DNA of 64,000 nt from Haliotis rubra (Eukaryota): positions 1,054,001 to 1,118,000 of the forward strand of contig NW_025765370.1 in the NCBI RefSeq assembly GCF_003918875.1, given 5' to 3'. Both the position numbers and the translations under genes were made by a program. Below the pieces are notes generated by a model. The model did not search any database. It saw only the letters and a program-made list of their open reading frames with translations, and was not told where the DNA came from. Of this stretch, positions 2,497 to 59,138 are shown piece by piece (position 1 is the first letter of the stretch; every line of letters starts with the position of its first letter).

Positions 2497-2598
2497 TAAA
2501 TAGATAATGAATGAAGGAATAGATAATTTATGAGTTGAACAGTTCATACCAACATGTTATAAATTTCTATGTGATATTTTTTGTTAGTTACTTCACAG

Positions 2599-2923
2599 AT
2601 GGCAACTCAGCAAAGAGGCAGACTTCCTCCAGAAGATGAGAAACGGTTACAGTTGAACTATGAATTCCTTAAAAGTGAACTTGATGGAAAAGACATAGTT
2701 GATAAAATGTTTCAGAGTGGCATTTTCTCTATGGATGACATGGAAGAAGTAAAAAATGCCATGCCAAATATTCGAAGCAAGAGGGCTGAAGTCTTTCTAA
2801 CTAAATTATTCAACTCAGGAAGCAATGGTTATACAGTATTCTTAGATGCAATTAAAGGAGCTGGATACCCGCATGTTGCTAAAATTCTCGAAAACACTGT
2901 TCTGGTTTCTGAAGTTGAAGAAG
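2599..2923 (+). CDS. CARD+Death-domain adaptor (CRADD/RAIDD-like architecture), coding exon 1: CARD
   Basis: Acceptor cacag directly before ATG 2599. CARD-like pattern (LQLNYEFLKSEL..IVDKMFQSGIFSMDDMEEV..RAEVFLTKL..GYTVFLDAI..YPHVAKIL). Donor G|GTAATG, phase 1. Confidence 0.85.
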
Positions 2924-3268
2924 GTAATGATGAAAATCACAAGACTTGTCTTTTGTTGAATTTTAATAAATCTGTTTGCCCACTGTAATTAAACTTAGAA
3001 TGAGTGGAAATCTGCAAGTGATCCAAGACTAATAAAATTTCTAATACTTGGCATTACCTGTTGGTCTATGGGATAGATAAATATTTATGACATCTTTTAT
3101 CTCATTATCTATATTCTCATTGAAAAACAAATGTCACCCTGCATTATTTGAAATGTTTACACTCAGTGTGTCTTTGGATCGAAGATGTGTCCTCACCATG
3201 ATGTTGAGGTGGAATTCAGATTGTCAAGTATATTTTCAATATTGGAATTTTATTGTCTGTTGTTTCAG

Positions 3269-3588
3269 AGGACTGGTTTGAGAGTGTGCCAGGTTCACGC
3301 AGGACGGACAAAATACAGGAGAAAGAGTTGAGCAGAATGGTGCAGGCATTTGGCATTGGCTGGGAATTCATCGCCATTGAACTTAAGATGACCAAAGCTC
3401 AAATTGAACAGGCCAAATTAGCTGGCCATACACCATACTTGCAGATGTTTAATGTATTTACGAAGTGGAGACAGCGTGAGGCAGGCAGAGCAACGTTCCA
3501 GGCATTTGTAAAGGCACTTCGGGCCTGTGAGAACATGTGTACTATAGACTGGGACATCATCAAGAATACAGTGCAAAACTCACATTGA
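3269..3588 (+). CDS. CARD+Death-domain adaptor, coding exon 2: Death domain; total protein 214 aa
   Basis: Acceptor tgtttcag| with phase 1 matching exon 1. Death-domain pattern (FGIGWEFIAIELKMTKAQIEQ..QMFNVFTKWRQRE..ATFQAFVKAL). Stop TGA at 3586-3588. Confidence 0.85.
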
Positions 3589-19337: not shown

Positions 19338-19831
19338 TGTTTACAGAAAGATTTAGTAGACTATGAAGATGAAGTTTGTTCAGTAATTACATGAACATTG
19401 ATCTATCTACATTTGGTGCTGATGTTGGTAAAATTGTTGAGTCATGTGACGAGAGATCCTTATCCACATAACTATGGAGGTTTACCCCTTCAGCAAGCTG
19501 ACACGGAGAGGTTGTCATCTGTGGGAAGACTCCTTGCTCTGCTACACTTGATGTAACTAGACGTTGATAATTATGAGATTGTCTGTGTTCTGCTTATGTA
19601 TTGTACTGAATGACTGTGTTCTCTACTGTGGCTGACTCTTCCCACCAAAACTTTGAACTACTCACAGAATACATTTACTTCTAAAGATAAGGTTTTACAG
19701 TAAAATTGTCAAGAACATTGTCAGTGTGTTTCAACCATTTGTTATTTCAAACAGTAGTAATGTATTTTATGCTTGAACTATCTGTACCTCTAGCACTCTA
19801 TGTTTTCTGTACCTGTAGTTGGGGTTTTCAG

Positions 19832-19965
19832 ATTGAGAGAAGCGAGACGCAAAGAGGATGACTTTGAAGAGACGGAAGCCGAGGCCGTCACACAGACAGC
19901 TCTTGACCTGGAGGACATGTGGGAGATGGAGACGAAACAGTTCACCCCAGCTGACCGCCTCACTG
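19832..19965 (+). CDS. MRPL46: MRPL46 exon 3
   Basis: QTALDLEDMWE..FTPADRLT; phases 2/1 consistent with flanking exons. Confidence 0.9.
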
Positions 19966-20439
19966 GTCAGTGCACTGGTCAGCGCTTCGCTCGCTGAACA
20001 ATAGGATGGATGAGAACACTTTCAAGAGAGAAAATAAAACAGTTCTCCATTTTCATTATTTTCATTGGTAGTTTGTCTCTTCACCCTGAATTGGTCTGAA
20101 TGTGGTTGATCTACTTAAGGCAGGACCTGCATTCTTCCGTACTAACTTCTTTAGCTATCACAGTATAGTGCAATATGGTTGAAACAATCTCTGTCTTCTC
20201 TTCGAATAAAACTACTTCTTGTGTCTATAATTATGTGAAATATGAAAAGACAAGATGATTTCAAATGATAGATGACTGTGCGAACTGAATACCTTTTTAA
20301 ATGCAAGAATCCGGATAACACAAGGCCCAGGGGTTGCATTCTTCACCAAATATGACGATACATGATATTTCAGGTGATTACCTGTGATGTTTCAGCTGAT
20401 GATCCCTGATATTGCAGTTGAGAATACCTGATGTTTCAG

Positions 20440-20582
20440 ATGCAGACAAGTCTGGAGACAAGAAGTCCACGGACAGGAAGTTGACAGAGAAGTTGGTACT
20501 TCTGGTGAAGCAGAAAGTCGGGGACAAGCCGCTGTGGGTGTTTCCCCAGGGAAGTTGGTCGGAGGGAGAATCTTTGAGAGAG
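20440..20582 (+). CDS. MRPL46: MRPL46 exon 4
   Basis: DRKLTEKLVLLVKQK..WVFPQG..EGESLRE (Nudix-like fold segment); phases 1/0. Confidence 0.9.
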
Positions 20583-20892
20583 GTGGGTCACAACATTACA
20601 ACAGTCAGCATCATAAAGCAACAAAAATGTTTAGTATTAAAGTACATGGTCTTGACTTACTCAGAGATGATCTTGGACAGTTTGAGGGGCTGTGCCTTTC
20701 CCTTTCAATTGTCAGTGGCATTGTTGAGCTGTATCACATAACTCTCATTTAGAACTGGTCTTTAGCAAGCCATGCTTGTTGTAAGAGACGACTAACTAAT
20801 GCTTGCTGACTTGGTCTTAGATTTTAGATTTATGATTCTAAGTGACTGTCCATCATACATGCAATGGATGATTGTTAGATTTGGTTGAACAG

Positions 20893-21018
20893 ACTGCAGA
20901 GAGAGTTCTTGGTGTCCGTTGTGGGGAGGAGTTATCTGCCCAGTTTGTCGGGAACGCCCCCTGTGGCGTACACCAGTACGTCTTCAGGTCAAGTCCTGAA
21001 ACAGAAACAGGAGTAAAG
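20893..21018 (+). CDS. MRPL46: MRPL46 exon 5 (not in ORF track)
   Basis: TAERVLGVRCGEELSAQFVGNAPCG..; acag| acceptor and AAG|GTATG donor, phases 0/0. Confidence 0.9.
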
Positions 21019-21230
21019 GTATGCCTTGATGGGGGTGTTTCAACCAGTTAACATGTTGTTAATTATCAGTTAAGAGCATGAAACATGAATTATTTTGTTA
21101 CCTTTTGACCAGCCCATTTTAGAGTGTTCAATTAGAACTCTCTGCCCTTATTCCTACATTGTGTATCATTAAGCAATAATTGCTTACTCACCCTTCTTCA
21201 TATCTGTGATAAGAAGGGACACTTCTTTAT

Positions 21231-21387
21231 GGGCGGGTGGTAGGGTAGTGGTTGAAGCGTTCGCTCGTCAAGCTAGAAACATAGGTTTGCTACCCCACAT
21301 TGGTACAATGTGTGAAGCCCATTTCTGGTGTCCCCAGCCATGAGATTGCTGAAATATTGCTAAAAGTGGCGTAAAACCTCACTCACT
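21231..21387 (+). mobile_element. SINE family A
   Basis: Family head, core and tail. Confidence 0.8.
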
Positions 21388-21769
21388 TTATCTGATTGAG
21401 TGTATATATGTGTAAAAAAAGAAAGGGTGATTTCCTTTTTAACATAATGAATGTTGTGATGTCATTCTTCCTGTTTTTTTTGTAACCTTTATTCAATAAG
21501 AAGAGAAATATACTGTGTTTAATAATGTGAAACTAGGTTACCAGTAGATCAAACTGCACTTTATTGAATTAAGAACTGAACATTAAGTGTGAGGCTTCAT
21601 ATGCTTATCCTTAAATCCAGCACAACATAAATTAGAGTATAAAATTAACATGATTTGGCATGTTAACCTTGAACTTCAATCTACTTAATATCACCAATTT
21701 GACACAGTGACAGTGCTTGTTGCATAATAATTCTGGCTAGTGATGTTTGTGTAATGTTGTTTTTTTCAG

Positions 21770-21922
21770 CTGTTTTTCTTCAAGGCTGCGTACAAGACAG
21801 GCAGTGTGAATGTAGATGAGGACAGTACTGAAGACTTTCTGTGGGTGACAAAGAGAGAACTGAGGGATTACCTGCATCCCTCGTATTACAGCAGTGTTAA
21901 GTCTTTTATACTTGATATATGA
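21770..21922 (+). CDS. MRPL46: MRPL46 exon 6 (last coding); total CDS 831 nt, 276 aa
   Basis: LFFFKA..DFLWVTKRELRDYL..FILDI*; candidate polyA signal AATAAA at 22518. Confidence 0.9.
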   Translation: MFFFKAAYKTGSVNVDEDSTEDFLWVTKRELRDYLHPSYYSSVKSFILDI

Positions 21923-39950: not shown

Positions 39951-40248
39951 ATGGAAAGTTGAATAAAATAAACGTTAACTCAAACAGTGACAAAGACTCC
40001 CAAGAAGGCGAACCATTACTGAATACTAAGCAGAGTCAAGCCACAGTTTCTGAGAAGACGTACGACCTTGACCCTGCTGCTATGCGCAAAGAGATTGTAC
40101 CAGTTCTGCGCCCCCTGGAGCTGGAACGTCCTCGGGGTGTTGACCGAAGTGGGATGTTTGATGGAGGAAGCCTGTCTCCGATATTGGACGAGCTTGAGTC
40201 GTCTTCAGATGATAAGTGCCTTAGTAGCACAGCAGATCAGGATGGCAG
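39951..40248 (+). CDS. CCDC66/CSPP1-like gene exon
   Basis: ttttcag| acceptor, open low-complexity S/D/E-rich frame, AG|GTGAG donor; phases 1/2. Confidence 0.75.
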
Positions 40249-40897: not shown

Positions 40898-43019
40898 CAG
40901 TACAACCAGAAATTATTGAGAATTTAAGATTGTAATTTTGTTCCTTCTTTTTCACTCATTACTCACGTATTAAATGTCAATATTAGCAGAACATAACTCC
41001 AGATTCAAAGACAGGTGAACAGTTAGTATTTTGTCAAGTCACCATGGGCAGCAATGCAGGCTTCAATGCGGCGGGGCATACTACTGATCAAAGAAGTTAG
41101 AAAGTCGTGGTCCATGCTGTCCCAATATCGGACCACCTCTTCTTTCATTTCAGCAATATCTGTCAGATTTTTCTTATTGACACTTTCCTTAAACATTTTC
41201 TATTGGATTTAGGTCAGGGCTATAGCTTGGCAAATCTAATAATGTCATATTTTGGGTCCGAAACCAGGCCTGTGAATGCTTTGAACGATGTTTTGGGTCG
41301 TTGTCCTGCTGGAAAATCCAAACATTTCCATAGAACACGTGAGCAGATGGAAGTAAATGTCCCTCGAGAATATCTGTGTACCGCTCACTGTTCATATTCC
41401 CTTCAAATACACAGAGGGGCGTTGCCCCTAACACAGATATGCCACCCCACACCTTATATTTCGAACTGTACTTTGGGCGCTAATACAAAAGTTTTTCAGT
41501 TTGTTTGGTCCAGAATTTCAGTGTATTAGGAAACAGCCACACAGAACTTTCATCTGAGTAAATCACATTGTCCCAGTTAAAATTTCTATGCTGTACGCAC
41601 CAGTTCAACCTTCGCTCCATATGTTCAGGTTTCATGATCGGTGATGGAATCCCTAGACTTTTCTGCCAACCCATTGCATACAGCTCAGTTCTTATTGTCT
41701 CCTTACAGACAGCCACAGTCCTCTATCAATCATATCCAGCCTTAAGGTTTCTAAACTCCTTCATTTTAGAAACAAGAATACCAAGCTGCCTCCTGTCACA
41801 GACAGTCAATTTTCTGGGCCTACCTGCGCCTCCCTGGTGCTCAATGCCATATCCATTTGCAATATTTTTCAAAACACGATAAACAGTGCACGAAGGGATG
41901 CCTGTTCTACTTGAAATCGCTTTAGCTGATCTGATGTCCTGGATCCGGTTGTATCATTGCTTTATTAACTAATGTCAACATTAAACCCTAATGATACATT
42001 AAATCCTTAATGCATCATTAGTTAATGGCATCATTAAAAACGGTTGTATCAAACACTTATTAGCCTATCATTATCTAATGACGTCTTAATGTAAATATTT
42101 CGTTAAATCCGGGGATTCCCCTAATTTTTTCCCACAATTCTACGCTGTAAACATGTAAGTGTTTCTCTCGGTCGTCTGTCAAAATGGCATCTTTAGGGCT
42201 AAACCTCGGAACAAAAACAAACATTTCGACTGCTGTGAAGAAACACGTCTAAATAATTCTGAAACGTCGCCGATAAACCTAGAATCGGTTGGGATGTTTT
42301 GGAATATACACGAACACGAACGCCGAAGTGAGCTTTCCGCCATATTGGATAGTGTGTACAAAATCAAGTTTCGCTAAGGCCAGTCATAGGACGCCTATTA
42401 TTATATCATGTATATTTCATATTCAGTTGTGACAAATGCATCGCCTTATTCCTCATACATTTTAGAATCAAATTCCAAATGGTCTTTGTCACTATAACCA
42501 AGTGTCTAAGAAAAAACAAAACATATTGGGTGTGAAAACGGGACGTTGTGCTCATTACACAGCGCGCTTGCTAGAAATATAATCAAAGCAAAAATCAGAT
42601 TTTATACTGTGCAGCATTTTCTCAATTTTTTAGACATCAGTTCGTCTATTCGTAGCATGCATGAGCTCAATATTTTTAGAATATGCACGGAAAGAGTGTC
42701 GTAGCAAGAACTAGAAAACTTAAAACTTTCTATGTAATTTTATAGCTGTAGGTAGATCCAGTGCGGTGCAAACGAAATTCTGGCGCAATGTTCACTTTTC
42801 CAGGAAGTTTAATGACGCTCTAATGATACCCCAGGACCTTCATTAAGTTAATGATGCACTAATGACAACAGAGCATCATTAAAACGTTAGTACAACAGAA
42901 TTTAATGATACAGTAGTTAATGAACGTTTAATGGCACGTTAATGCTTCATTAAAGTTTGATACAACCGGGTCCTGTTATAATACTCTAAAATCAACTTCC
43001 TCTTCTCTAAATCATCCAT
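40898..43019 (-). mobile_element. Decayed Tc1 (DD34E) transposon interrupted by a Harbinger-like element
   Basis: TA+CAGTACAACCAGAAATTATTG end at 40898. Motifs GRPRK, IYSDES and QQDNDPKH..SPDLNPIE, with 34 residues between D and E. ATG at about 43019, stop at about 41023. Other TIR not seen. Confidence 0.85.
41942..42972. mobile_element. Non-autonomous PIF/Harbinger-like element nested in the Tc1 transposase
   Basis: TIRs GATCCGGTTGTATCA / TGATACAACCGGGTC, CTG TSD, TTAATGA-rich subterminal repeats; Tc1 coding resumes on both sides. Confidence 0.8.
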
Positions 43020-44017
43020 ACTGAGGATCACTGAAAATGTCGTCTGCTAGCATCAAAGAGAAATTGTGTATGATTTGTTCACATTTCTTTAGGTATTGGT
43101 GGGGTAGGACAGTGGTGAAGGCACTCACTTGTCACAGTAAACAGGTTTGATTCCACACATTATCTCCAACATGATTATGTCACATTCAGTTGTTGTAGCA
43201 AGCAATATGAGAGAGGACAGTAGCATTGGTTTGTGTTGTTTGTGGCCAATCGTTATGTGCTTATCCATGTCTTCCTCCGACAGCAGCACCACCTAGCAGG
43301 CCCACGAGGAACTACTGTAGCTGTTGTACTAACAGCTGACGATGTGACCAACAGCCATCACAGGTACCCAATATCCCCTAATCCCAGCCCCCATTGAATA
43401 TTGTACTTGTGTATGTCTTGAGAGTTAAGAAATATTATTGGTACATAGATTGCTTGATAGGCAAGTAGCTTTATTAGTAGTTTTTTCACTAATGAAGTGT
43501 TATGACATATGTTGCAACATCTGATTGACTAAATAGAAGACAAAACATGTTGTTTGTAACTTTACATGTGTATTTAGATAGCATAATGTGGGGTTTTACA
43601 GTAAGTGTGACATTTGCCTTGACACAGACTTCTGAAGGCTTCACATTTGGTAGCCCAGGTCTTGAATGAACCTTGTACAAGTGCCAAGGGACATTACTCT
43701 GCACACATTATATAAATCAACTTATCAATTTGAATGTCATATATAATTATGTTTGAAATGATATTTTGTGTCATATGCTTTGTATTGAAATATCCCTAAT
43801 ATGTGTTTTTTATTAGATGTTGTTAATCTGGTACTGGTGTGTAAATAACATTATCTTCATAGATCTAACTTGTATAATTATCTTTATAAATGTTTTTTTA
43901 TCATTGCTTGTATTCAATTTTCTTAGGAAGTTAGTAGTTCTGTGTTGTGGTACTAGAAAACAATTCTTCTAGCCTAGTTAGTTGTTCATGCTCGTTTAGA
44001 GTGGAGTGGTCTTACAG

Positions 44018-44642
44018 CAGGACCACAGTCACCATCTGTGGTTTAAACATTGTGTTGACATATAGACACACCCTTCATGGAACTTCTACCCACAGCCCTG
44101 TCAGTGGGACAACATGGTTTAATGGCTCAGTGTCTTGTGGAGATGTTTGACATCAGTCCTAGTACAGGACCACAACCACTGTCACGTCTGTGGTTAAAGT
44201 GTCTTGACATATAGACACACCCTTTATGGAACTTCTACCCATAGCCCTGTCAGTGGGACAACATGGTTTAATGGCTCTGTTACCTTGTGGAGATGTTTGA
44301 CATCAGTCCTAGTACAGGGCCACAATCACTGTCACGTCTGTGGTTAAAGTGTCTTGACATATAGACACACCCTTCATGGAACTTCTACCCATAGCCCTGT
44401 CAGTGGGACAACATGGTTTAATGGCTCAGTGTCTTGTGGAGATGTTTGATATCAGTCCTAGTACAGGACCACAACCACTGTCACGTCTGTGGTTAAAGTG
44501 TCTTGACATATAGACACACCCTTCATGGAACTTCTACCCATAGCCCTGTCAGTGGGACAACATTATGGCTCTGTTACCTTATGGAGATGTTTGACATCAG
44601 TCCTAGTACAGGGCCACAATCACTATCACATCTGTGGTTAAA
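44018..44642. repeat. Tandem repeat, about 4 copies of 149/150 bp, alternating A/B variants
   Basis: TATAGACACACCC at 44061, 44210, 44360 and 44509. Confidence 0.9.
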
Positions 44643-45281
44643 GTTTTAATGTATGATGTAATTTGATTGGATGGGGTTATGACCTTGAACTTTGCTCCAA
44701 ATGGAGGTGATGGCAAATAGGTCCAGGGAAATTATCATAAAAAATGAAGATGATATTACACCGGATAATTGGTAATTACTTTGACAGCATATCTAGACAG
44801 CATTGTCTGCAAGGGAAGGAAGGGTAGCCAAGTGGTTGAATCGCTTGTCCCCAAACCAATTTCAATCCCTACATGTGTTTTCAGGGTGTTACCATCATTA
44901 TTGGTGCCCATATTGCCAAAATGTTGCAAAAAGAATCATACAGTAATAAGAAATTTCATGTTTTTGTAAACTTTAAATTTTTCCCATACATTGAAGTTTG
45001 GTCACTTTTAAAATATGTTAATATGAATTTTTGTTTGAAACTCAACTTGGATATCTTATAATGAGCAGTTTTCATTCTGAACCAGAAATGTCGATTGCTG
45101 ATGTCAATGAAATACTTATGGAAGCATCATTAACAATCTCACTCATTGATGCCCCGATTTTGAGAAAAACTCTTTTGTCTTGAAAAGCACTTATCATCAC
45201 ATTGTTATCAAATGATTTAATGATTGAGTGAATCTTGAAGTACAATGTATAGTTAGTGCAGCAGTTTCTATAAACTTACAG

Positions 45282-45457
45282 CAAATCCTCAGCTCCACAT
45301 CCAACAGAATCAGTTAAGGTGGCAACAATCCCTTCCGCAACGGTCTCCATGTCCAACTGGAGTGACCCCTCATTCAGCATAGACTTACCTCCCCTTGTTC
45401 CACAACAACATCTCACGTTGGCTGAGAAGAAGAAACCGCAGTGGGTGCGGGAGAGAG
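45282..45457 (+). CDS. CCDC66/CSPP1-like gene exon (not in ORF track)
   Basis: ttacag| acceptor, phase 2; ends LTLAEKKKPQWVRER; donor G|GTTAGT, phase 1. Confidence 0.75.
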
Positions 45458-45763
45458 GTTAGTTTACTTAGTTGTCATGGTTACATGAAACTAAACAAAA
45501 TGGATAATATCTGGGTACTTCTAATGTCAAAACTCTCATAGTGCTTCATGCATTATATTTTTAAATGATGCATTCATGACAAGTAGGAAGCATCACTCAG
45601 TGATGCATCATGGCTGAAAAACCCAGGAAAATATACTACTCAAAGGAACTTTAAGAATACTTCTTTTTGTCATATGCCAGTTTTTCTAATTAGATCCAAG
45701 ATGGGTTTTTGTTGGCCCAAGAACATTTTCTTTAGCGTAATTTTTTTTTTTTTTTTGTACCAG

Positions 45764-45861
45764 CGGAGTTTGATTCCTGCTATGACCCCTGGGGTCGGCG
45801 GAGTAGAAGCAAGACCAGGCAATCCATGAGTCGAGCTGGCAGCATCCTAACAGATTATCCA
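45764..45861 (+). CDS. CCDC66/CSPP1-like gene exon (YDPWGR motif)
   Basis: Long poly-T acceptor; AEFDSCYDPWGRRSRSK..TDYP; donor CCA|GTGAGT, phase 0. Confidence 0.75.
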
Positions 45862-45964
45862 GTGAGTTAATAATTTTTAGTTTCTGTATCTTTCAGCAAC
45901 TTAGTGTCAAACCATCAATGTTGTTCTGGAGAAAATCATCCCGATGAAGGTGTATGTCTGATAG

Positions 45965-48358
45965 TTCCCTGCAGGTGATGCATGTTATAAGTTGTGTTAT
46001 TCCCTGCAGGTGATGCATGTTATAAATTGTGTTATTCTCCTGCAGGTGTTGTATGATGTAGGTTTTGTTATTCCCTGCAGGTGATGGATGATATAAGTTG
46101 TGTTATTCCCTGCAGGTGATGCATGTTATAAGTTGTGTTATTCCCTGCAGGTGATGCATGTTATAAATTGTGTTATTCTCCTGCAGGTGTTGTATGATGT
46201 AGGTTTTGTTATTCCCTGCAGGTGATGGATGATATAAGTTGTGTTATTCCCTGCAGGTGATGCATGTTATAAGTTGTGTTATTCCCTGCAGGTGATGCAT
46301 GTTATAAATTGTGTTTTTCTCCTGCAGGTGTTGTATGATGTAGGTTTTGTTATTCCCCGCAGGTGATGGATGATATAAGTTGTGTTATTCCCTGCAGGTG
46401 ATGGACTATATAAGTTGTGTTATTCCCCGCAGGTGATGGATGATATAAGTTGTGTTATTCCCCGCAGGTGATGGATGTTATAAGTTGTGTTATTCCCTGT
46501 ATGTGATGGATGGTATAAGTTGTGTTATTCCCTGCAGGTGATGGATGTTATAAGTTGTGTTATTCCCCGCAGGTGATTGATGATATAAGTTGTGTTATTC
46601 CCTGCAGGTGATGGATGATATAAGTTGTGTTATTCCCTGCAGGTGATGGATGATATAAGTTGTGTTATTCCCTGCAGGTGATGGATATTATAAGTTGTGT
46701 TATTCCACGCAAGTGATGGATGATATAAGTTGTGTTATTCCCTGCAGGTGATGGATGTTATAAGTTGTGTTATTCCCTGCATGTGATGGATGTTATAAGT
46801 TGTGTTATTCCCCTGCAGGTGATGGATGTTATAAGTTGTGTTATTCCCTGTATGTGATGGATGATATAAGTTGTGTTATTCCCTGCAGGTGATGGATGTT
46901 ATAAGTTGTGTTATTCCCCACAGGTGATGGATGATATAAGTTGTGTTATTCCCTGCAGATTATGGATGTTGTAAGTTGTGTTATTCCCTGCAGGTGATGG
47001 ATGATATAAGATGTGTTATTCCCTGCAGGTGATGGATGATTTAAGTTGTGTTATTCCCCGCAGGTGATGGATGATATAAGATGTGTTATTCCCTGCAGGT
47101 GATGGATGATTTAAGTTGTGTTATTCCCTGCAGGTGATGGATGATATAAGATGTGTTATTCCCTGCAGGTGATGGATGATTTAAGTTGTGTTTTTCCCCG
47201 TAGGTGATGGATGATATAAGATGTGTTATTCCCCGCAGGTGATTGATGATTTAAGTTGTGTTATTCCCCGCAAGTGATGGATGATATAAGTTGTGTTATT
47301 CCCCGCAGGCGATTGATGATTTAAGTTGTGTTATTCCCTGCAGGTGATGGATGATATAAGATGTGTTATTCCCCGCAGGTGATTGATGATTTAAGTTGTG
47401 TTATTCCCTGCAGGTGATGGATGATATAAGTTGTGTTATTCCCCGCAGGTGATGGATGATATAAGTTGTGTTATTCCCCGCAGGTGATGGATGATTTAAG
47501 TTGTGTTATTCCCTGCAGGTGATGGATGATATAAGTTGTGTTATTCCCCGCAGGTGATGGAGGATTTAAGATGTGTTATTCCCTGCAGGTGATGGATGAT
47601 TTAAGTTGTGTTATTCCCCGCAGGTGATGGATGATTTAAGTTGTGTTATTCCTTGCAGGTGATGGATGATATAAGTTATGTTATTCCCCGCAGGTGATGG
47701 AGGATTTAAGTTGTGTTATTCCCTGCAGGTGATGGATGATATAAGATGTGTTATTCCCCGCAGGTGATGGATGATTTAAGTTGTGTTATACCCTGCAGGT
47801 GATGGATGATATAAGTTGTGTTATTCCCCGCAGGTGATGGAGGATTTAAGTTGTGTTATTCCCTGCAGGTGATGGATGATATAAGTTGTGTTATTCCCCG
47901 CTGGTGATGGAGGATTTAAGTTGTGTTATTCCCTGCAGGTGATGGATGATATAAGTTGTGTTATTCCCTGCAGGTGATGGATGATATAAGATGTGTTATT
48001 CCCTGCAGGTAATGGATGATTTAAGATGTGTTATTCCCCGCAGGTGATGGAGGATTTAAGTTGTGTTATTCCCTGCAGGTGATGGATGATATAAGATGTG
48101 TTATTCCCTGCAGGTGATGGATGATATAAGATGTGTGATTCCCTGCAGGTAATGGATGATTTAAGATGTGTAATTCCCCGCAGGTGATGGAGGATTTAAG
48201 TTGTGTTATACCCTGCAGGTGATGGATGATATAAGATGTGTTATTCCCTGCAGGTGATGGATGATATAAGATGTGTTATTCCCTGCAGGTAATGGATGAT
48301 TTAAGATGTGTTATTCCCCGCAGGTGATGGATGATATAAGTTGTGTTATTCCCCACAG
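45965..48358 (+). repeat. 35-bp minisatellite (about 68 units) built from an intron/exon junction
   Basis: Unit GTGATGGATGATATAAGTTGTGTTATTCCCTGCAG; the last unit runs directly into the exon GTGATGGAGGATGAG. Confidence 0.95.
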
Positions 48359-48425
48359 GTGATGGAGGATGAGAAGAAGCTGCTGCAGAAGATACAGGAT
48401 AGATCCAAGTGGCTGGCAGAGCTGG
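48359..48425 (+). CDS. CCDC66/CSPP1-like gene exon following the minisatellite
   Basis: VMEDEKKLLQKIQDRSKWLAEL; phase 0 in, donor G|GTCAGT phase 1 out; both neighbours fit. Confidence 0.75.
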
Positions 48426-48451
48426 GTCAGTCCTTGTGTCTTCATTAGCTG

Positions 48452-48605
48452 AGGGACATTGGGGTAACCTAGTGGTTAAAGCATTTGCACATCATGCTGT
48501 AAATCTGAGTTTGATTCTCTACAAGGGTACAATGTTTGATGGTGTCCCAGCCGTGTTATTGCTTGAATGTTGTTAAGAGTGGCATAAAACCATACTCACT
48601 CACCC
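48452..48605 (+). mobile_element. SINE family A, old copy
   Basis: Degenerate head, core and tail. Confidence 0.7.
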
Positions 48606-48882
48606 TCACTTGAGGCCATTTTGTTAAAGTTTTTGGCAAAGAGAGTATTAATGGAACAGAAATTCTCCTGCTATTCTTGACATTTGTCAGAGAACCTTTG
48701 GGATGGCAACAGCTGAGCAGAGTTACATGAATACAAAGACATTTCATGATAGTATTTAATAAGACAAAGCTTTGACATTGCTTTCATTTCTCATTTCTCA
48801 TTCTCCTGTTTGTGTCAACATCATTTAATATATGCAATATTTAATGTGATTTTTATAGATATATTTCCTTTTTCCACTACAG

Positions 48883-49027
48883 AGAAACAACGAGAAGAAC
48901 AGCGACTTCAGAGATTTGAGCGACTGGAAGCTGACAGAAAAGCCGTTCAGAACTCTTTCATTGACAAGTTCTCTCAGGAGCGGAAGCCTGTCCCTCTACC
49001 GTCTCAGATCAACATTCAGAAAGATAG
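48883..49027 (+). CDS. CCDC66/CSPP1-like gene exon (coiled coil); alternative donor after 49047
   Basis: EKQREEQRLQRFERLEADRK..; ctacag| acceptor, phase 1. Confidence 0.72.
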
Positions 49028-49223
49028 GTTGGTGTTTGGTAACCAATGTAAGTGAGACTGTTCAGTGGGCATCTGGTGGTGGATTTGTGAACTGTAGATG
49101 GGCACCAGGCTGGTAACCCCTAACTTACTAACTGGATTGAGCTGTGAACATGATTCCAGGCAGGAGCACAGGGCTGAGTCTTGGCTGATCCTCGTCACCA
49201 TCTTAGATTCCTTAAACACACAA

Positions 49224-49753
49224 CAGGGCTACAGATAAGGGGCATACAGGCGTAATGTACGCCTCAAAATCAATTAAGTACGACATAATATAAGATTTCA
49301 AGCGTATCGTGAACGCACATAAATACCTTCGTACGTCTAGCATTTAATTTCCGAGCGTATCATGCAAATGGAAATCTATTTCGGATAAATACTTGTTTAG
49401 TTTCTTTTGCGAAACACGATTTGACACATAAGGAAACCCCGACAGTAGGAATCCCTTGCGTTGCCATGCAACGATATGCGTCACTATTTTTCGATTGGCT
49501 AAAACTACACTGTTCCCATTTATATCCAGTCGGACCTGACATTTCGCGCATCACACAGTCGCTCAGTTATTTCTCACGCGTCTTCAAATACAAACACATG
49601 GTTGGAAATAGTGATCGATGAATCGTCCAGACAAACCGCATCAACTTGCTTACACAAAAACATGTCAGTACTCCTTCAAAATTCTCAGTACACCTCCACT
49701 TACAATATGATGTGTAAGTACACTCACACACCCAAAAGTTATCTGGAGCCCTG
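49224..49753. mobile_element. hAT-like MITE
   Basis: TIRs CAGGGCTACAGATAA / TTATCTGGAGCCCTG; imperfect ACACAA duplication. Confidence 0.6.
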
Positions 49754-49864
49754 ACACAAGATATTGGGACTGTTTTGTTTCAGTATAACCTGATCCTAAT
49801 GGTTGAAGATGATCCTTGCAGGCTCCTTGTGTTGTTATTGCACTTCTACGGTTTTTTAATGTAA

Positions 49865-51040
49865 TAGCCTTGTGCAGTTCATTAGTGCCTTGGCCTTGTG
49901 CAGTAATCTAATGCTTTGTCTAGCAGTTCTTTAATGCTTGGGCCTTGTGCAGTTCTTTAATACTTTGCCTTCTGCATTACTTAATGCTTTGGCCTTGTAC
50001 AGTTCTTTACTCCTTTGCCTTCTGCATTACTTAATGCTTTGGCCTTGTACAGTTCTTTACTCCTTTGCCTTCTGCATTACTTAATGCTTGGGCCTTGTGC
50101 AGTTCTTTAATGCTTTGCCTTCTGCATTACTTAATGCTTTGGCCTTGTACAGTTCTTTACTCCTTTGCCTTCTGCATTACTTAATGCTTGGGCCTTGTGC
50201 AGTTCTTTACTCCTTTGCCTTCTGCATTACTTAATGCTTTGGCCTTGTACAGTTCTTTACTCCTTTGCCTTCTGCATTACTTAATGCTTGGGCCTTGTAC
50301 AGTTCTTTACTCCTTTGCCTTCTGCATTACTTAATGCTTTGGCCTTGTACAGTTCTTTACTCCTTTGCCTTCTGCATTACTTAATGCTTGGGCCTTGTAC
50401 AGTTCTTTACTCCTTTGCCTTCTGCATTACTTAATGCTTGGGCCTTGTGCAGTTCTTTACTCCTTTGCCTTCTGCATTGGCCTTGTGCAATTTAATGCTT
50501 TGGCCTTGTACAGTTCTTTACTCCTTTGCCTTCTGCATTACTTAATGCTTGGGCCTTGTACAGTTCTTTAATGCATTTGTCTTGTGGATTCCTTTTATGC
50601 TTTGGCCTTGTACAGACCTCTGCCATATAGTTGCTGAGTATTGCTGAGTGCGGCTAAACTCACTCACTCTTTAACGCTTTGGCTTTGTGTAGTTCTTTTA
50701 TACATTGACCATGTACAGTTCTTTAATGCATTTGTATTGTGCATTCCTTTAATACTTTGGCCTTGTGCAGTTCTTTAATACTTTGGCCTTGTGCAGTTCT
50801 TTAATACTTTGGCCTTGTGCAGTTCTTTAATACTTTGGCCTTGTGCAGTTCTTTAATACTTTGGCCATGTGCAGTTCTTTAATGCACTTTGGCCTTGTGC
50901 AGTTCTTTAATACTTTGGCCTTGTGCAGTTCTTTAATACTTTGGCCTTGTGCAGTTCTTTAATACTTTGGCCTTGTGCAGTTCTTTAATACTTTGGCCTT
51001 GTGCAGTTCTTTAATGCATTGGCCTTGTGCATCCCTTTAA
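49865..51040. repeat. Compound minisatellite: 50-bp units, then 26-bp units, with a SINE-B tail fragment between
   Basis: TTAATGCTTTGGCCTTGTACAGTTCTTTACTCCTTTGCCTTCTGCATTAC repeated; then TTAATACTTTGGCCTTGTGCAGTTCT repeated; SINE tail at about 50610-50670. Confidence 0.9.
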
Positions 51041-51353
51041 AACCAAGTTCTATGGATAAACAACTTCTTTATTGCAATGAATGTGACATTTCATATTGCT
51101 CTAGTTTGATATTGTTGATATCTTTTAAAGAAATATGTGTGTAAGTTTGACTGATAACTTAAAAAAAAAGACTGACATGTGATGTAACTCACTGTTTTTC
51201 AATCCCAAATTATTAAAAATATAATAACATATACAATCTAAAAGTGTCTATTGCAGCAGGTAACCTATTATTTCATATATATGCTGATAGACTATGTTTT
51301 GGTAAACCATTTATTTGAAACACAACTTTGAACTGATTTGTTTTCCGTTTCAG

Positions 51354-51408
51354 ATCTGTTGTAACTACTATGCCAGCAAGACCCCTCAACAGAAAACTTC
51401 CAAGATGA
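51354..51408 (+). CDS. CCDC66/CSPP1-like gene, probable last coding exon
   Basis: Strong acceptor ttttccgtttcag|. The phase-2 reading gives RSVVTTMPARPLNRKLPR*; all three frames stop within about 75 nt. Confidence 0.5.
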
Positions 51409-52798
51409 CCAGATTCTATGCACGATGACTCAGTATGGTTCCATGCACATGTGGTAAAGTGTGGAGCCATCTCACAGACAGCATCTCTCTCTGCTTGATC
51501 ACCTCTTTGATCATGTGGACAAAGGCATTTGACCTTGGATCTGAAGGTCAATGGTTTGAAAACCATCACAGGACTCCTGAATGTTGAAGGTTGCTGGACA
51601 CAAGGCTTCAACTCAGTCAAGACTCTACACCTTCCAAATTAATTCTTTAAATGTGATATGTGTACTTCCAGTTTCTAAATATACATTTCAAGTGGAAATA
51701 TAATTTGTGGAGGTTTTGTTGATATGATTCTGCACTTTATGTTTCTGTATTAAATAAGAATGAGCCCAATCCATTGATATGTGATTAACAGATGTATTGA
51801 TAATAGGTTCTGAGTTGGTATATTGGGCTTGACATTGTTGTCCAGTAGTTGTCAGTTAAAACAATTGACCGACCACTTGGTTGCCATTTTGAAGTTTCTT
51901 GGATGTTATTCAATACTTTATTTCAGACATTTCCTTTTTGGCATAACAATTTGTGAATCAGAATTTTACCTAGACACCAGATATGTCACCCTCCTTGACT
52001 ATAATTCATGTGACGTTTCACAAACAACAACTCCTTAACAGTTTTGTGAAGTGTTGACATGTCCCATTATTTTGAGAATAAGGTGGTTGTGTTCCGAGTT
52101 TACAGGTCTTCATCCTTTGCATTGCTTCCATGTAGAATATAGTTACGTTTCGTGGGCATGTTGCTCATTTTCGATGCCATGGTTACATGTTATTGACAGG
52201 CAAGGTTTGCAGGGATACAGTATATCAGGGCGGACTTGAGAATTGTGATGCTGGAGAGTTTGGATAGTCTGACAGGACTATGTTCAACTGACTTTTCAGG
52301 GCTTTTACAGTTTAGGGAAATAATTGCAGCTGTTACCTTCGTGTTTAATTCTGAACATGAATGACCTTTCCGTTTCAGGTAAAACCTTTTGAAATACAAA
52401 TATGACTGTGATTATTTATTAATCATCTCAAATCGTTTTGTGTTGGTCCCAATGGAACTGATTCACCTGTGTGGTACAATGTTATTCAGTGATACTGTGG
52501 GTTTTTTTCAGTCATTTGCTAGATTGTCTGGTCCAGACTCGATTAAGTGCAGACCACCGTCATATAGGTCAAATATTGCTTAGTGCGGTGTTAAACAACA
52601 AACAAAATATATTTCCTTTTTCATATTGTGAAGGTTGGGGTAAATTTTGATTTCTATGGGATATTTTTTGTTATCAATGTTGATCTGTTAACCTGCTCCA
52701 GGGCTGTGCTGATGAGGCAACCAATAACCGGTACTTTCCTGTGTGGCCTTTCTAAAGCACCTAACGTATATATCTGAAATATGAAAGCATACAAGTAT

Positions 52799-53170
52799 TG
52801 ATTACACAATGCCATTTAGAAAGTGATCAAATGTTACATGTTATATTTGGGATTACACTTTCTTAGTAAAGTACAGATTCTAGTACTTTTGTTGGGTTGA
52901 GTCCCATCCGGGATTTGAACCGACACCCTCAGAGTCGGGCACCTAATCACCAGCACACAAAGTCAGCCGACTAACCCGCTCAGCCCGAAGCCACCGCGAC
53001 TTCCACAAAATGAAAGTCGGACAACTGGTAGTCTAGACTGCGGACTTTGTGTACTCCTCTGATAAGTGTAAACTGGCTAGGCTCCCACAGCCGAAAGCTA
53101 TGATTACACAATGCCATTTTAGAAAGTAGTCAAATGTAAGAAAGTAATCCCAAATATAACATATGTTACA
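52799..53170. mobile_element. Non-autonomous element with direct and inverted terminal modules and an internal tRNA-like segment (minus strand)
   Basis: Layout A-B-[B box GGTTCAAATCC on minus]-A-B'; related fragments at 5945 and 11920. Confidence 0.55.
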
Positions 53171-54039
53171 TACAGGTATTGATCTTCAAGCAGTGAATTC
53201 GAATATAATATATGTCAGGTTGGCATGGGAAACATTATGTCTGCACAAGGTTGGAGTATTTTTACATACTCAATTTCTTCAAGTCAGATCTGTACATTGT
53301 GTTACACATTTTCTCAGTCTGAAGGAAGTATTAACAAGAAACCAAAGTTTTGTTTTGACTGTTATTTAAGACATCACATCCTTTAAACTGGACTCAAAGC
53401 AGCTATGGGGATGAGTGAGCGCAGGGTATTTAGTGTGATAGAATGCAGATGTTGTACGCTGGATAACTTAAGTACATGTTGATGTTGAAAAGGTGTGACA
53501 TGCTTGTCACATTGTCTTGTTGGTATGTTTATTGAATGTTTTGCTAGATTTCCAAATGTTGCACAAATACCATAACATTCTTGTTGTGGAATGTATAGCT
53601 TTAACATGTATTGATATCTGTTATTATTTTACAGGTATGTTTTGTTTGTTTATATGCTCTTCTCAAAGTATGTGATAATGATATTCATTCCTATAATCAA
53701 CAACAGATAGAATCTCTTTGGAAATCTGTTGACATTCATGATTTTGTTCATGCAGAAATACTTAAATGTCAAATAAAATGATCAAATGATGTTATTAATG
53801 GCCCATCCCAGAAATACTGGATTTTCAGACAGAGGTGCTTTGTTGTTTCAGCACTTTACTTTTGGATTGCTCAGAGTTTCAGCATTGTGTAACAAATTAG
53901 AAACCAAAGTCAAGAACCTTTTATATTACAACTAGTGTGTTACCCTTTTTAAATAAAAAAGAAAACTTCATGTACATGAAATTTTGAATTGACATTCAAA
54001 GGAATATGTTTTTGCCTCAATTTCATTGTTTCCTTTTAG

Positions 54040-54620
54040 GATGTTTTTTCCCTGCTGCAATGCAGAACGGGGGACATTGTATTCAGCATTGTCTGTACAT
54101 ATGTCTGTCTGTACATCAGTACGTACATCCCGATTCTTGTTAACACGATATCTCATGAACTGTTGTACCCAATGTCTTCAAATTTGGTGACACAGGATTA
54201 TGCAGACACGGGTCGATTTGGGTGACCTTGACCTAATTTTAAAGGTCACAACGACATTTTGACCACGGTTCAAACTCATGTTAGCACAATATTTCATGCA
54301 CTGTTGTACCCAATATCATCAAATTTGGTGACAGCCTACATTGGGAGTTTACACAGACACTGGTTGATTTGGGTGACCTTAACTGTATTTACAAGGTCAC
54401 CACGACACTTTGGTCACTTTTCAAAATCTTGTTAACGAGATATCTCATGCACTTGATGTACCCAATGTCTTCAAATTTGGTGACAGCCTACATTGGGAGA
54501 TTTCACAGATACAAGTGAATTTGGGTGACCTTGACCTTATCTTCAAGGTCACCATGCCACTTTGACCACTTTTCAAACTTATGTAAATGTTGTACCCAAT
54601 TATAGCCTCCGAGCTGAAGA
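54040..54620. mobile_element. Helentron/DINE-1-like non-autonomous element with internal tandem repeats
   Basis: GGGGACAT followed by a (GTCT/GTAC)n microsatellite-like tract and about 3 internal repeats containing TGACCTTGACC..AAGGTCAC. Confidence 0.6.
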
Positions 54621-58231: not shown

Positions 58232-59138
58232 TACTGACAACGGACCACTGTAGAATGTGTAGCTATAATATTGCTGACAACAGACTTCTGTTGATTATGT
58301 GTAGCTAAAATATTGCTGACAACTGCCCACTGTTGAATGTGTGTAGCTATAATATTGCTGACAACAGACCACTGTGGAATATATTTGTAGCTATGATACT
58401 GCTGAAAACAGGCCACTGATGAAGATGTGTAGCTGTAATATGTAGCTATAATATTACAGACAAAAGACCACTGGAAAATGTATAGCTATAATATTGCTGA
58501 CAACAGACTTCTGTGGAATATGTGTAGCTACAATATTGCTGACAACAGACCACTGTGGAATATGTGTAGCTACAATGTTGCTGACAACAGACCACTGTGG
58601 AATATGTGTAGCTACAATATTGCTGACAACAGACCACTGTGGAATATGTGTAGGTACAATGTTGCTGACAACAGACTTCTGTGGAATATGTGTAGCTACA
58701 ATATTGCTGACAACAGACCACTGTGGAATATGTGTAGCTACAATATTGCTGACAACAGACCACTGTGGAATATGTGTAGCTACAATGTTGCTGACAACAG
58801 ACCACTGTGGAATGTGTAGCTAAAATATTGCTGACAACAGACCACTGTGGAATATGTGTAGCTACAATATTGCTGACAACAGACCACTGTGGAATATGTG
58901 TAGGTACAATGTTGCTGACAGCAGACAACTGTGGAATATGTGTAGCTACAATATTGCTGACAACAGACTACTGTGGAATATGTGTAGCTATAATATTGCT
59001 AACAACAGAGCACTGTTGAAGATATGTAGCTATAATATGTAGCTATGATATTACAGACAAAAGGCCACTGGGAAATGTATTGCTACAATATTGAAGACAA
59101 CAAGCCACAGTGGAATATGTGTAGCAATAATATTGCTG
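58232..59138. repeat. 42-bp minisatellite, about 21 units
   Basis: GTAGCTACAATATTGCTGACAACAGACCACTGTGGAATATGT repeated, with a homogeneous centre and degenerate edges. Confidence 0.93.

What the first reader, a model, noticed from the sequence alone, without database searches (positions are those of the whole stretch)
45862..48425. Intron filled with about 69 tandem copies of its own 3' splice site: a CAG|GT ladder before the true exon
Seen: the 35-bp unit is the pyrimidine-rich end of the intron (..TTATTCCCTGCAG) plus the start of the downstream exon (GTGATGGA..), so the array arose by amplifying the intron/exon junction. The ancestral intron was probably only about 113 nt. The upstream exon ends in phase 0, so splicing to a typical unit other than the last reads VMDDISCVIPCR followed by a stop. 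Nearly every decoy AG is followed by GT (GTGATG; a stronger GTAATG at 48009, 48149 and 48289). Established: an AG|GT junction regenerates a 5' splice site, which is the signature of recursive-splicing ratchet points. Inference: the spliceosome either bypasses about 68 proximal acceptors through exon definition or steps through them recursively. Array length could then act as a VNTR dial on the productive versus NMD transcript ratio. Four-unit higher-order repeats (about 140 bp) occur at both ends.
Basis: partly seen in the sequence, partly recalled or inferred. Interest (0 to 1): 0.82.

Follow-up and report, generated by a model that had tools for sequence, protein, structure and literature searches.

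The report
Splice-junction "mirage" minisatellite in abalone intron
An intron of an abalone-only gene ends in 68 tandem copies of its own intron/exon junction; this is a real but already described kind of repeat ("mirage" minisatellite) that four abalone species share, that gene models splice past, and that nothing here shows to regulate splicing.

Summary
Window 45965-48370 is a 35-bp tandem array of 68.6 copies. There are 68 full units before exon B (48359-48425). 62 decoy positions keep AG, and 60 of them are AG|GT. Splicing to any decoy gives a stop after about 12 codons. In 1.38 Gb the repeat occurs only at this locus.

The window matches Haliotis rubra LOC124269224, an uncharacterized gene found only in Haliotis. 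Its NCBI model joins exon A (ends 45861) to exon B across the whole array.

The orthologous intron carries the same array in H. rufescens (44 units), H. cracherodii (5+12 units) and H. asinina (about 12-15 units, half without AG). All four use the last unit as the acceptor. The flanking exons are under purifying selection (dN/dS 0.04-0.18).

[quoted passage not shown] It is the 3' mirror image of the human F7 intron-7 VNTR. Earlier notes of this scan report many such arrays elsewhere in this genome.

Recursive splicing is not supported. The regenerated donor is weak, the intron is short, and AG|GT is no better conserved than the rest of the unit. No RNA covered the exons, so leakage and any dial effect remain untested.

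The parts
45282..45457 (+). Coding exon e4 of LOC124269224 (upstream of exon A)
   Evidence: tblastn of P0003, residues 245-306. Boundaries read from flanks: acceptor ...cttacag, donor GAG|GTTAGT.
45764..45861 (+). Exon A; ends in phase 0; donor CCA|GTGAGT at 45862
   Evidence: P0003 residues 304-337 at 100% identity; sequence. Conserved in four Haliotis species with dN/dS 0.04-0.18.
45862..45964 (+). Non-repeat 5' part of the intron (113 nt counting the first partial unit to 45974)
   Evidence: Positions 59-113 plus the first units align collinearly to the H. asinina intron, 80.5% over 118 nt.
45965..48358 (+). 35-bp minisatellite: 10-nt partial unit plus 68 full units, each ending in an acceptor-like ...CAG and starting with GTGATG. 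62 decoy AG, of which 60 are AG|GT.
   Evidence: TRF; unit table; counts. Unique to this locus in the genome.
45975..46397 (+). 5' higher-order repeat: three 141-bp blocks of four unit types (units 1-12). Unit types 1, 5 and 9 match the North Pacific species' consensus except at 2 positions.
47974..48358 (+). 3' higher-order repeat: 140-bp blocks marked by GTAATG at 48009, 48149 and 48289. The exon-like GGAGGAT variant occurs in units 46, 50, 54, 56, 60 and 64.
48359..48425 (+). Exon B. Its first 12-18 nt belong to the repeat register. It has a purine-rich start (74% purine, 9-nt purine run) and the donor TGG|GTCAGT.
   Evidence: P0003 residues 337-358 at 100% identity.
48883..49047 (+). Exon C, in frame with B (phase 1). 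Alternative donors after 49027 and 49047 correspond to the two H. asinina isoforms.
39951..40248 (+). Larger upstream coding exon of the same gene model
   Evidence: P0003 residues 146-243; boundaries.

Best explanation
This is a splice-junction ('mirage') minisatellite. A 35-bp segment spanning the 3' end of the intron and the first 12-18 nt of exon B was duplicated in tandem before the four sampled Haliotis lineages split. It has since expanded, contracted and homogenised by slippage or unequal exchange, giving higher-order repeats and species-specific unit variants. It is carried as a tolerated passenger.

The whole array is removed as part of one 2.5-kb intron, and the last, exon-adjacent acceptor is the productive one. 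From -23 to +8 the true acceptor is identical to at least one decoy, so the choice cannot come from the 3' splice site itself.

The inferred discriminator is exon definition. Only the last copy is followed by a purine-rich exon and, 67 nt on, a proper donor with +5 G. Decoys are followed by pyrimidine/GU-rich repeat and only weak GTGATG donors. Any leakage to decoys would carry a stop after about 12 codons and is presumably lost.

Shown: the anatomy, uniqueness, age, coding constraint on the flanking exons, and annotated junctions. Inferred: the exon-definition mechanism and the low level and fate of decoy use.
For: The array and its register are. It is unique in the 1.38-Gb genome. The exon start is part of the repeat.

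H. rubra XP_046560196.1 maps at 100% identity to exons A, B and C and joins A to B across the array. The H. asinina and H. rufescens RefSeq models make the same junction.

The orthologous intron holds the same array in H. rufescens (44 units), H. cracherodii (5+12 units, split by a ~750-bp insertion) and H. asinina (about 12 clear units, 6 without AG). Each species has its own unit variant.

Exons A-C have dN/dS 0.04-0.18 at dS 0.35-0.56 between clades, in the frame set by the last acceptor. The gene is single-copy.

AG|GT is no better conserved than other unit positions. The true site is identical to a decoy over -23..+8 but differs by at least 6 positions by +18. The exon start is 74% purine against 50% for decoys.

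The class is described in the literature. Amphioxus 'mirages' span exon-intron boundaries, often keep AG/GT, and RT-PCR indicates regular splicing (PMC3087553). The human F7 IVS7 37-bp VNTR has silent pseudo-sites (PMC1557585).
Against: There is no transcript evidence from this locus. The four candidate RNA runs covered only repeats, with zero depth on exons B and C. The junctions therefore rest on NCBI gene models, whose RNA support I could not inspect.

A proximity or first-come rule would favour the first decoys, which are transcribed about 2.4 kb before the true site. Silence of 62 near-perfect acceptors is therefore assumed, not shown.

The unit consensus is better conserved between clades (80-94%) than neighbouring single-copy intron (70-77%). 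This could hint at constraint, although slow array turnover would also explain it.

The direction of origin cannot be polarised without an outgroup. The junction may have been copied into the array, or the exon start may have been recruited from an older array.
Confidence: 0.75

Rival explanations
1. Recursive-splicing ladder. The spliceosome splices exon A to a proximal AG|GT, the junction regenerates a donor, and the intron is removed stepwise through the units until exon B is reached.
For: 60 decoys have juxtaposed AG|GT, and the true exon also starts with GT. AG|GT is kept in nearly all units of H. rubra, H. rufescens and H. cracherodii.
Against: The regenerated donor CCA|GTGATG matches only 5 of 9 consensus positions and lacks the +5 G present in all authentic donors of this gene. 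The competing donor at the next unit (CAG|GTGATG, 7 of 9) is stronger. By the donor-competition rule shown in Drosophila, that predicts inclusion of 35-nt frame-breaking pieces rather than clean recursion (PMC8605326). The intron is 2.5 kb, whereas ratchet points lie in long introns. There is no site-specific conservation of AG|GT. In H. asinina half the units lack AG and most AGs lack a following GT, yet the same exon junction is annotated.
Confidence: 0.05
2. Expression dial. Decoys capture a length-dependent fraction of transcripts, which are destroyed by NMD, so array length tunes the output of the gene.
For: Every decoy gives a premature stop upstream of later exon junctions. Decoys are sequence-identical to the true site over -23..+8. 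Array length differs four-fold between species. Intronic VNTRs can affect splicing in other genes (ABCA7; title and abstract only).
Against: There are no RNA or population data. Copy number and AG content drift freely between species (68, 44, 17 and about 12 units, with AG lost in H. asinina) while the coding exons stay constrained. That pattern fits tolerance rather than a tuned setting. In amphioxus, mirages are reported not to interfere with splicing.
Confidence: 0.1
3. Reverse origin. An intronic minisatellite came first, and its last unit later supplied the acceptor and the first 12-18 nt of exon B (exonisation), rather than the junction being copied into an array.
For: There is no outgroup without the array; no homologue was found outside Haliotis. 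The older-looking unit type (GCATGTT), shared by the H. rubra 5' units and the North Pacific species, resembles the exon start less (9 of 12) than the younger H. rubra units do (11-12 of 12).
Against: The array edges have the form expected of a duplicated junction: a partial unit made only of intron end at the 5' edge, and the exon continuing out of the last unit at the 3' edge. Described mirages are interpreted as boundary duplications. The exon start is identical over its first 15 nt in all four species and is under purifying selection.
Confidence: 0.15
4. Assembly or annotation artefact. The array length is mis-assembled, or the gene is not really expressed and spliced as modelled.
For: Copy number in a 2.4-kb repeat depends on a single assembly. 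There was no read support at the exons in the runs available. H. asinina and H. cracherodii annotations split or truncate the gene.
Against: Four independent assemblies carry the array at the same place. Variant-rich higher-order structure argues against a collapsed or inflated repeat. The exon frames are conserved with dN/dS well below 1. Three RefSeq models agree on the A|B junction.
Confidence: 0.05

Closest known systems
Amphioxus 'mirage' minisatellites (Adh3; globin genes BflGb6 and BflGb9), as described in PMC3087553
   Same: They are tandem repeats whose unit spans an exon-intron boundary, here the 3' end of an intron plus the 5' part of the next exon, as in BflGb6. Many units keep AG/GT. 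Regular splicing is reported to be unaffected. They show concerted evolution and length variation.
   Different: The phylum differs (mollusc). The unit is 35 bp, against 150-160 bp in the globins and 10-72 bp in Adh3. The copy number is much higher (68, against 3-6 in BflGb6). The array persists across four species separated by dS 0.35-0.56. Here splicing has not been checked by RT-PCR.
Human F7 intron-7 37-bp VNTR (PMC1557585)
   Same: It is a minisatellite of similar unit size whose edge unit spans the exon-intron boundary, so the authentic splice site is flanked by a row of sequence-identical pseudo-sites that stay silent. It has been used as a natural model of splice-site choice.
   Different: In F7 the array duplicates the 5' splice site and the most upstream copy is used. 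Here it duplicates the 3' splice site and the most downstream copy is used. This array also has many more copies. No experiments have been done on it.
Recursive-splicing ratchet points of Drosophila and vertebrates (PMC8605326)
   Same: Juxtaposed acceptor and donor (AG|GT) inside an intron.
   Different: Ratchet points lie in long introns, have a strong and highly conserved regenerated donor that out-competes the cryptic exon's donor, and are single sites rather than tandem repeats. None of these holds here.
Other junction minisatellites noted by this scan in the same genome (unchecked AI notes)
   Same: The notes describe arrays built from intron/exon junctions, several shared between abalone species and spliced past.
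   Different: They lie in different genes. I did not re-test those notes.

Membership tests
Mirage (splice-junction) minisatellite | Head-to-tail tandem repeat of minisatellite unit size | tested here: met
   Period 35, 68.6 copies, 90% matches.
Mirage (splice-junction) minisatellite | Unit spans an exon-intron boundary: it contains the intron end with its splice signal plus the adjacent exon letters, and the authentic junction sits at the array edge | tested here: met
   Units end in ...CAG and begin GTGATGGA. The array runs 12-18 nt into exon B. The exon is confirmed by the H. rubra protein.
Mirage (splice-junction) minisatellite | Regular splicing uses the authentic junction; the repeat copies are not used | tested here: inconclusive
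   RefSeq models of three species join A to the last acceptor.
Mirage (splice-junction) minisatellite | Repeat turnover: concerted evolution and copy-number change | tested here: met
   There are 68, 44, 17 and about 12-15 units in four species, with species-specific unit variants and higher-order repeats. Within-species length polymorphism was not testable.
Recursive-splicing ratchet point | Juxtaposed acceptor AG and donor GT | tested here: met
   60 of 62 decoy AGs are followed by GT.
Recursive-splicing ratchet point | Regenerated donor strong enough to beat the downstream cryptic-exon donor | tested here: not met
   CCA|GTGATG matches 5 of 9 consensus positions and has no +5 G. The next unit's CAG|GTGATG matches 7 of 9. 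Authentic donors of this gene match 6-8 of 9 and all have +5 G (with four of the seven listed donor positions corrected by one base from the flanks). This is a crude consensus count, not a trained model.
Recursive-splicing ratchet point | Located in a long intron | tested here: not met
   The intron is 2497 nt. Ratchet points predominantly lie in long introns, for example about 50-73 kb.
Recursive-splicing ratchet point | AG|GT motif conserved above its surroundings | tested here: not met
   The core positions rank mid-field among the 35 unit positions. In H. asinina 6 of 12 units lack AG.
Recursive-splicing ratchet point | Splicing intermediates or lariats at the site | not testable with these tools
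   No RNA reads at the locus.
F7-type boundary VNTR with silent pseudo-sites | Repeat duplicates the 5' splice site, and the first (exon-adjacent) copy is used | tested here: not met
   Here the 3' splice site is duplicated. It is an analogue (mirror image), not a member.

The most novel reading that the evidence does not exclude
The 62 near-perfect decoy acceptors are not silent. They are used stepwise, or they capture a length-dependent share of transcripts, so that the array sets the productive output of this abalone-specific gene. Its retention across four species, with a unit consensus better conserved than the neighbouring intron, would then reflect selection.
Probability: 0.07. Interest if true: 0.7.

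Novelty: new member of a known kind. Interest (0 to 1): 0.3.

Why it matters
As a phenomenon it is already described, so by itself it changes little. Its value is as an unusually clean natural test case for 3' splice-site choice. There are 62 acceptors identical to the real one from -23 to +8, lined up ahead of it, in a gene whose flanking exons are under purifying selection. Natural variants exist in sister species with 44, 17 and about 12 units, with and without AG. It is the 3' counterpart of the F7 model that was used to argue for oriented scanning at 5' splice sites. Together with the other junction arrays noted in this genome, it also suggests that abalone would be a good system for asking why splice junctions are prone to tandem amplification.

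Tried and rejected
RNA evidence. One run search gave four small runs guessed to be RNA and three runs of unknown kind, probably DNA. Laying the part beside it (48044-54043) showed contigs only on dispersed repeats at 90-95% identity, with zero depth on exons B and C.

Protein identity. Pfam found nothing on any exon peptide. The word search with exon C found nothing. The exhaustive search found only the Haliotis cluster and one spurious coiled-coil hit. Searches with the H. rubra protein and with its C-terminal part found only Haliotis proteins. The gene has no paralogue in its own genome.

Other readings rejected. Dispersed satellite or transposon origin was rejected because all genome-wide hits lie in this array. 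A structured RNA or tRNA-derived feature was rejected: Rfam and ARAGORN found none in 44000-50000. Selection on AG|GT was rejected because there is no excess conservation. I considered reading the high conservation of the unit consensus as constraint, but slow array turnover explains it equally well.

Joined step left out. The spliced model was never joined into one sequence. Exons were searched and compared one by one by reference, and dN/dS counts were summed exon by exon.

Full report
**What is there**

Window 45965-48370 is a single tandem array with period 35, 68.6 copies and 90% matches.
- Cut in the register of the splice signal, it consists of a 10-nt partial unit (45965-74) and 68 full units (45975-48358). 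Exon B then begins at 48359 with the same letters as a unit.
- Of the 69 acceptor-register positions, 63 end in AG. That makes 62 decoys plus the true site. 60 of the decoy AGs are followed by GT.
- Four-unit higher-order repeats occupy both ends: units 1-12 at 141 bp, and units 58-68 at 140 bp. The middle shows a two-unit alternation.
- Exon A ends in phase 0 at 45861. Reading on from any decoy gives about 12 codons and then the TGA of the next unit.
- The similarity between the unit and the exon start extends 12-18 nt into the exon and beat all 300 shuffles.
- A 25-nt unit pattern with up to two mismatches occurs 62 times in the 1.378-Gb assembly. All 62 are in this array, and the reversed control has none. 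A BLAST of 221 bp finds only this locus.

**The gene**

- Pfam recognises nothing in the exon peptides, and the word search with exon C was blank.
- The exhaustive profile search with exon C (by reference) found one real hit, a 167-aa Haliotis asinina protein.
- Its 90% cluster also holds Haliotis rubra XP_046560196.1, uncharacterized LOC124269224, 416 aa.
- That protein maps to the window exon by exon, at 100% identity for exons A (45764-45861), B (48359-48425) and C (48883-49047). Further exons lie at 45282-45457, at 39951-40248 and upstream. The window is therefore H. rubra DNA or something nearly identical.
- The NCBI model joins ...ILTDYP to VMEDEKK..., that is exon A to the last acceptor, across the whole array.
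- Searches with the H. rubra protein and its C-terminal part found only Haliotis proteins. The gene is single-copy in its own genome.
- I never joined exons into one sequence. Every search and comparison was made exon by exon, or with stored database proteins.

**Comparison of the orthologous intron**

The genomic loci of the orthologues show the same array at the same place.

| Species | Intron length | Units | State of AG / GT |
|---|---|---|---|
| H. rubra | 2497 nt | 68 | 62 decoy AG, 60 of them AG\|GT |
| H. rufescens | 1968 nt | 44 | all units end in AG and almost all are followed by GT (2 by ATG) |
| H. cracherodii | 1743 nt | 5 + 12, split by a ~750-bp insertion | three units have CTG instead of CAG |
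| H. asinina | 1723 nt | about 12 clear units plus a few degenerate ones | half end in CAT or CGT; few AGs are followed by GT |

- In all four species the exon starts with the same 15 letters, and the last unit provides the acceptor.
- Each species has its own majority unit. The H. rubra 5' units carry the variant that dominates in the North Pacific species. This is the pattern expected from repeat turnover with concerted evolution.
- The 5' edge of the array is orthologous between H. rubra and H. asinina (80.5% over 118 nt).
- H. asinina has an extra 1.1-kb insertion with 15-bp inverted ends before the array. H. rufescens and H. cracherodii have roughly 395 nt ahead of their first unit.
- The 'ancestral 113-nt intron' therefore cannot be established. 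No array-free state was found.

**Is the exon real?**

- Exons A, B and C, compared exon by exon among the four species, give dN/dS of 0.04-0.18. Synonymous divergence between the clades is 0.35-0.56.
- The frame that is conserved is the one set by splicing at the last acceptor.
- The array has therefore persisted through a deep split within the genus while the flanking coding sequence stayed constrained.

**RNA**

- The one run search returned four small runs guessed to be RNA and three runs of unknown kind, probably DNA.
- The stretch beside it (last nine units to 54043) attracted contigs only on dispersed repeats at 90-95% identity. Depth was zero on exons B and C.
- This says nothing either way about expression or decoy use. 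It is the main gap in this report.

**How it most likely works**

- From -23 to +8 the true acceptor is identical to at least one decoy, and 20 decoys lie within two mismatches. Only from about +13 does it become unique, with at least 6 mismatches by +18.
- The 3' splice-site signal itself therefore cannot explain the choice.
- From established knowledge (my own, not tested here), an AG every 35 nt means the branch point for the productive reaction must lie inside the last unit. Every unit offers the same candidate.
- What differs is downstream. The exon start is 74% purine with a 9-nt purine run, against 50% and at most 6 nt for the decoys. It is followed after 67 nt by a donor with +5 G.
- I infer exon definition through exonic enhancers and the real donor. 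Decoys are mostly ignored, and any leak ends in an early stop.
- This matches what is reported for the described class. In amphioxus, tandem repeats spanning exon-intron boundaries ('mirages') often keep AG/GT, yet Adh3 data and globin RT-PCR indicate regular splicing (PMC3087553). In human F7, a 37-bp VNTR that spans the exon 7 donor provides a row of functional but silent pseudo-sites (PMC1557585).

**Why not recursion**

- After splicing exon A to a decoy, the regenerated donor would be CCA|GTGATG. It has 5 of 9 consensus matches and neither -1 G nor +5 G.
- The authentic donors of this gene score 6-8 of 9 and all have +5 G. Four of the seven positions in the list were off by one base and were corrected from the flanks.
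- The donor at the next unit junction, CAG|GTGATG, is stronger at 7 of 9.
- Work in Drosophila shows that recursion needs the regenerated donor to beat the cryptic-exon donor, and that ratchet points sit in long introns with highly conserved AG|GT (PMC8605326).
- Here the intron is 2.5 kb and AG|GT ranks mid-field among unit positions for conservation. H. asinina has lost much of it while keeping the same annotated junction.
- The 'dial' idea is not excluded, but it has no support. Copy number and AG content drift freely among species.

**Open point**

The unit consensus differs between clades at only 2-7 of 35 positions. Alignable neighbouring intron is only 70-77% identical. This may simply reflect slow turnover, with a majority consensus keeping the ancestral state. 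I do not read it as constraint, but it is unexplained.

**Novelty**

- The kind is known. After my own literature search had already surfaced the F7 paper and the amphioxus globin paper, earlier notes of this scan on other pieces of the same genome gave me the term 'mirage'. They also indicate that such arrays are frequent in this abalone.
- I checked the literature claim myself. I did not check the other loci.
- This instance is a large and old example in a lineage-restricted gene: a new member of a known kind.

Noticed in passing
window 2575-2985 and 3208-3585 (+): Two exon-like ORFs encode a CARD domain (E 9e-11) and a Death domain (E 5.5e-5). This looks like a CRADD/RAIDD-like adaptor gene.
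   Followed up: partly
window 19794-21919 (+): A series of exon-like ORFs has a weak NUDIX match (E 0.028). From memory they resemble mitochondrial ribosomal protein L46; this was not tested.
   Followed up: no
window 41023-41716 (-): Remnant of a DDE_3 (Tc1/mariner-type) transposase lies inside an intron of the same gene.
   Followed up: partly
window 48444-48643: A dispersed repeat sits just after exon B's donor. Its sequence looks tRNA-derived or SINE-like, but ARAGORN finds no tRNA. It attracted very high contig depth at 90-95% identity in all four runs. Similar repeats lie at 49.2-49.8 kb, 51.0-51.2 kb and 52.4-53.2 kb.
   Followed up: partly
window 49867-49998; L011 14171-14328: A second minisatellite (26 bp, about 5-6 copies) lies downstream of exon C. 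It is present at the corresponding place in H. asinina, so it is also old.
   Followed up: no
window 58440-59040; L011 21289-21518: A tandem repeat (42-bp unit by TRF in H. asinina; read only from repetitive ORFs in the window) lies upstream of the neighbouring CCDC66-like gene. It is shared between H. rubra and H. asinina.
   Followed up: no
window 44022-44644: A 149-bp tandem repeat with 4.2 copies lies in the intron upstream of exon e4.
   Followed up: no
L011 10586-11720; L013 21043-21791: There are lineage-specific insertions in the orthologous intron. In H. asinina a 1.1-kb element with 15-bp perfect inverted ends lies ahead of the array. In H. cracherodii a ~750-bp insertion splits the array in two.
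   Followed up: partly
L011 1270-15389; L013 10001-16078: Annotation is inconsistent between species. The single 416-aa H. rubra model corresponds to two separate models in H. asinina (248 aa and 167 aa) and to a truncated 245-aa model in H. cracherodii. The H. rufescens model includes an extra exon matching window ORF 43224-43394.
   Followed up: partly
window 45975-48358 against L012 and L011 arrays: The majority unit differs between clades at only 2-7 of 35 positions, while neighbouring single-copy intron is 70-77% identical. The cause is unexplained; it may be slow turnover or constraint.
   Followed up: partly
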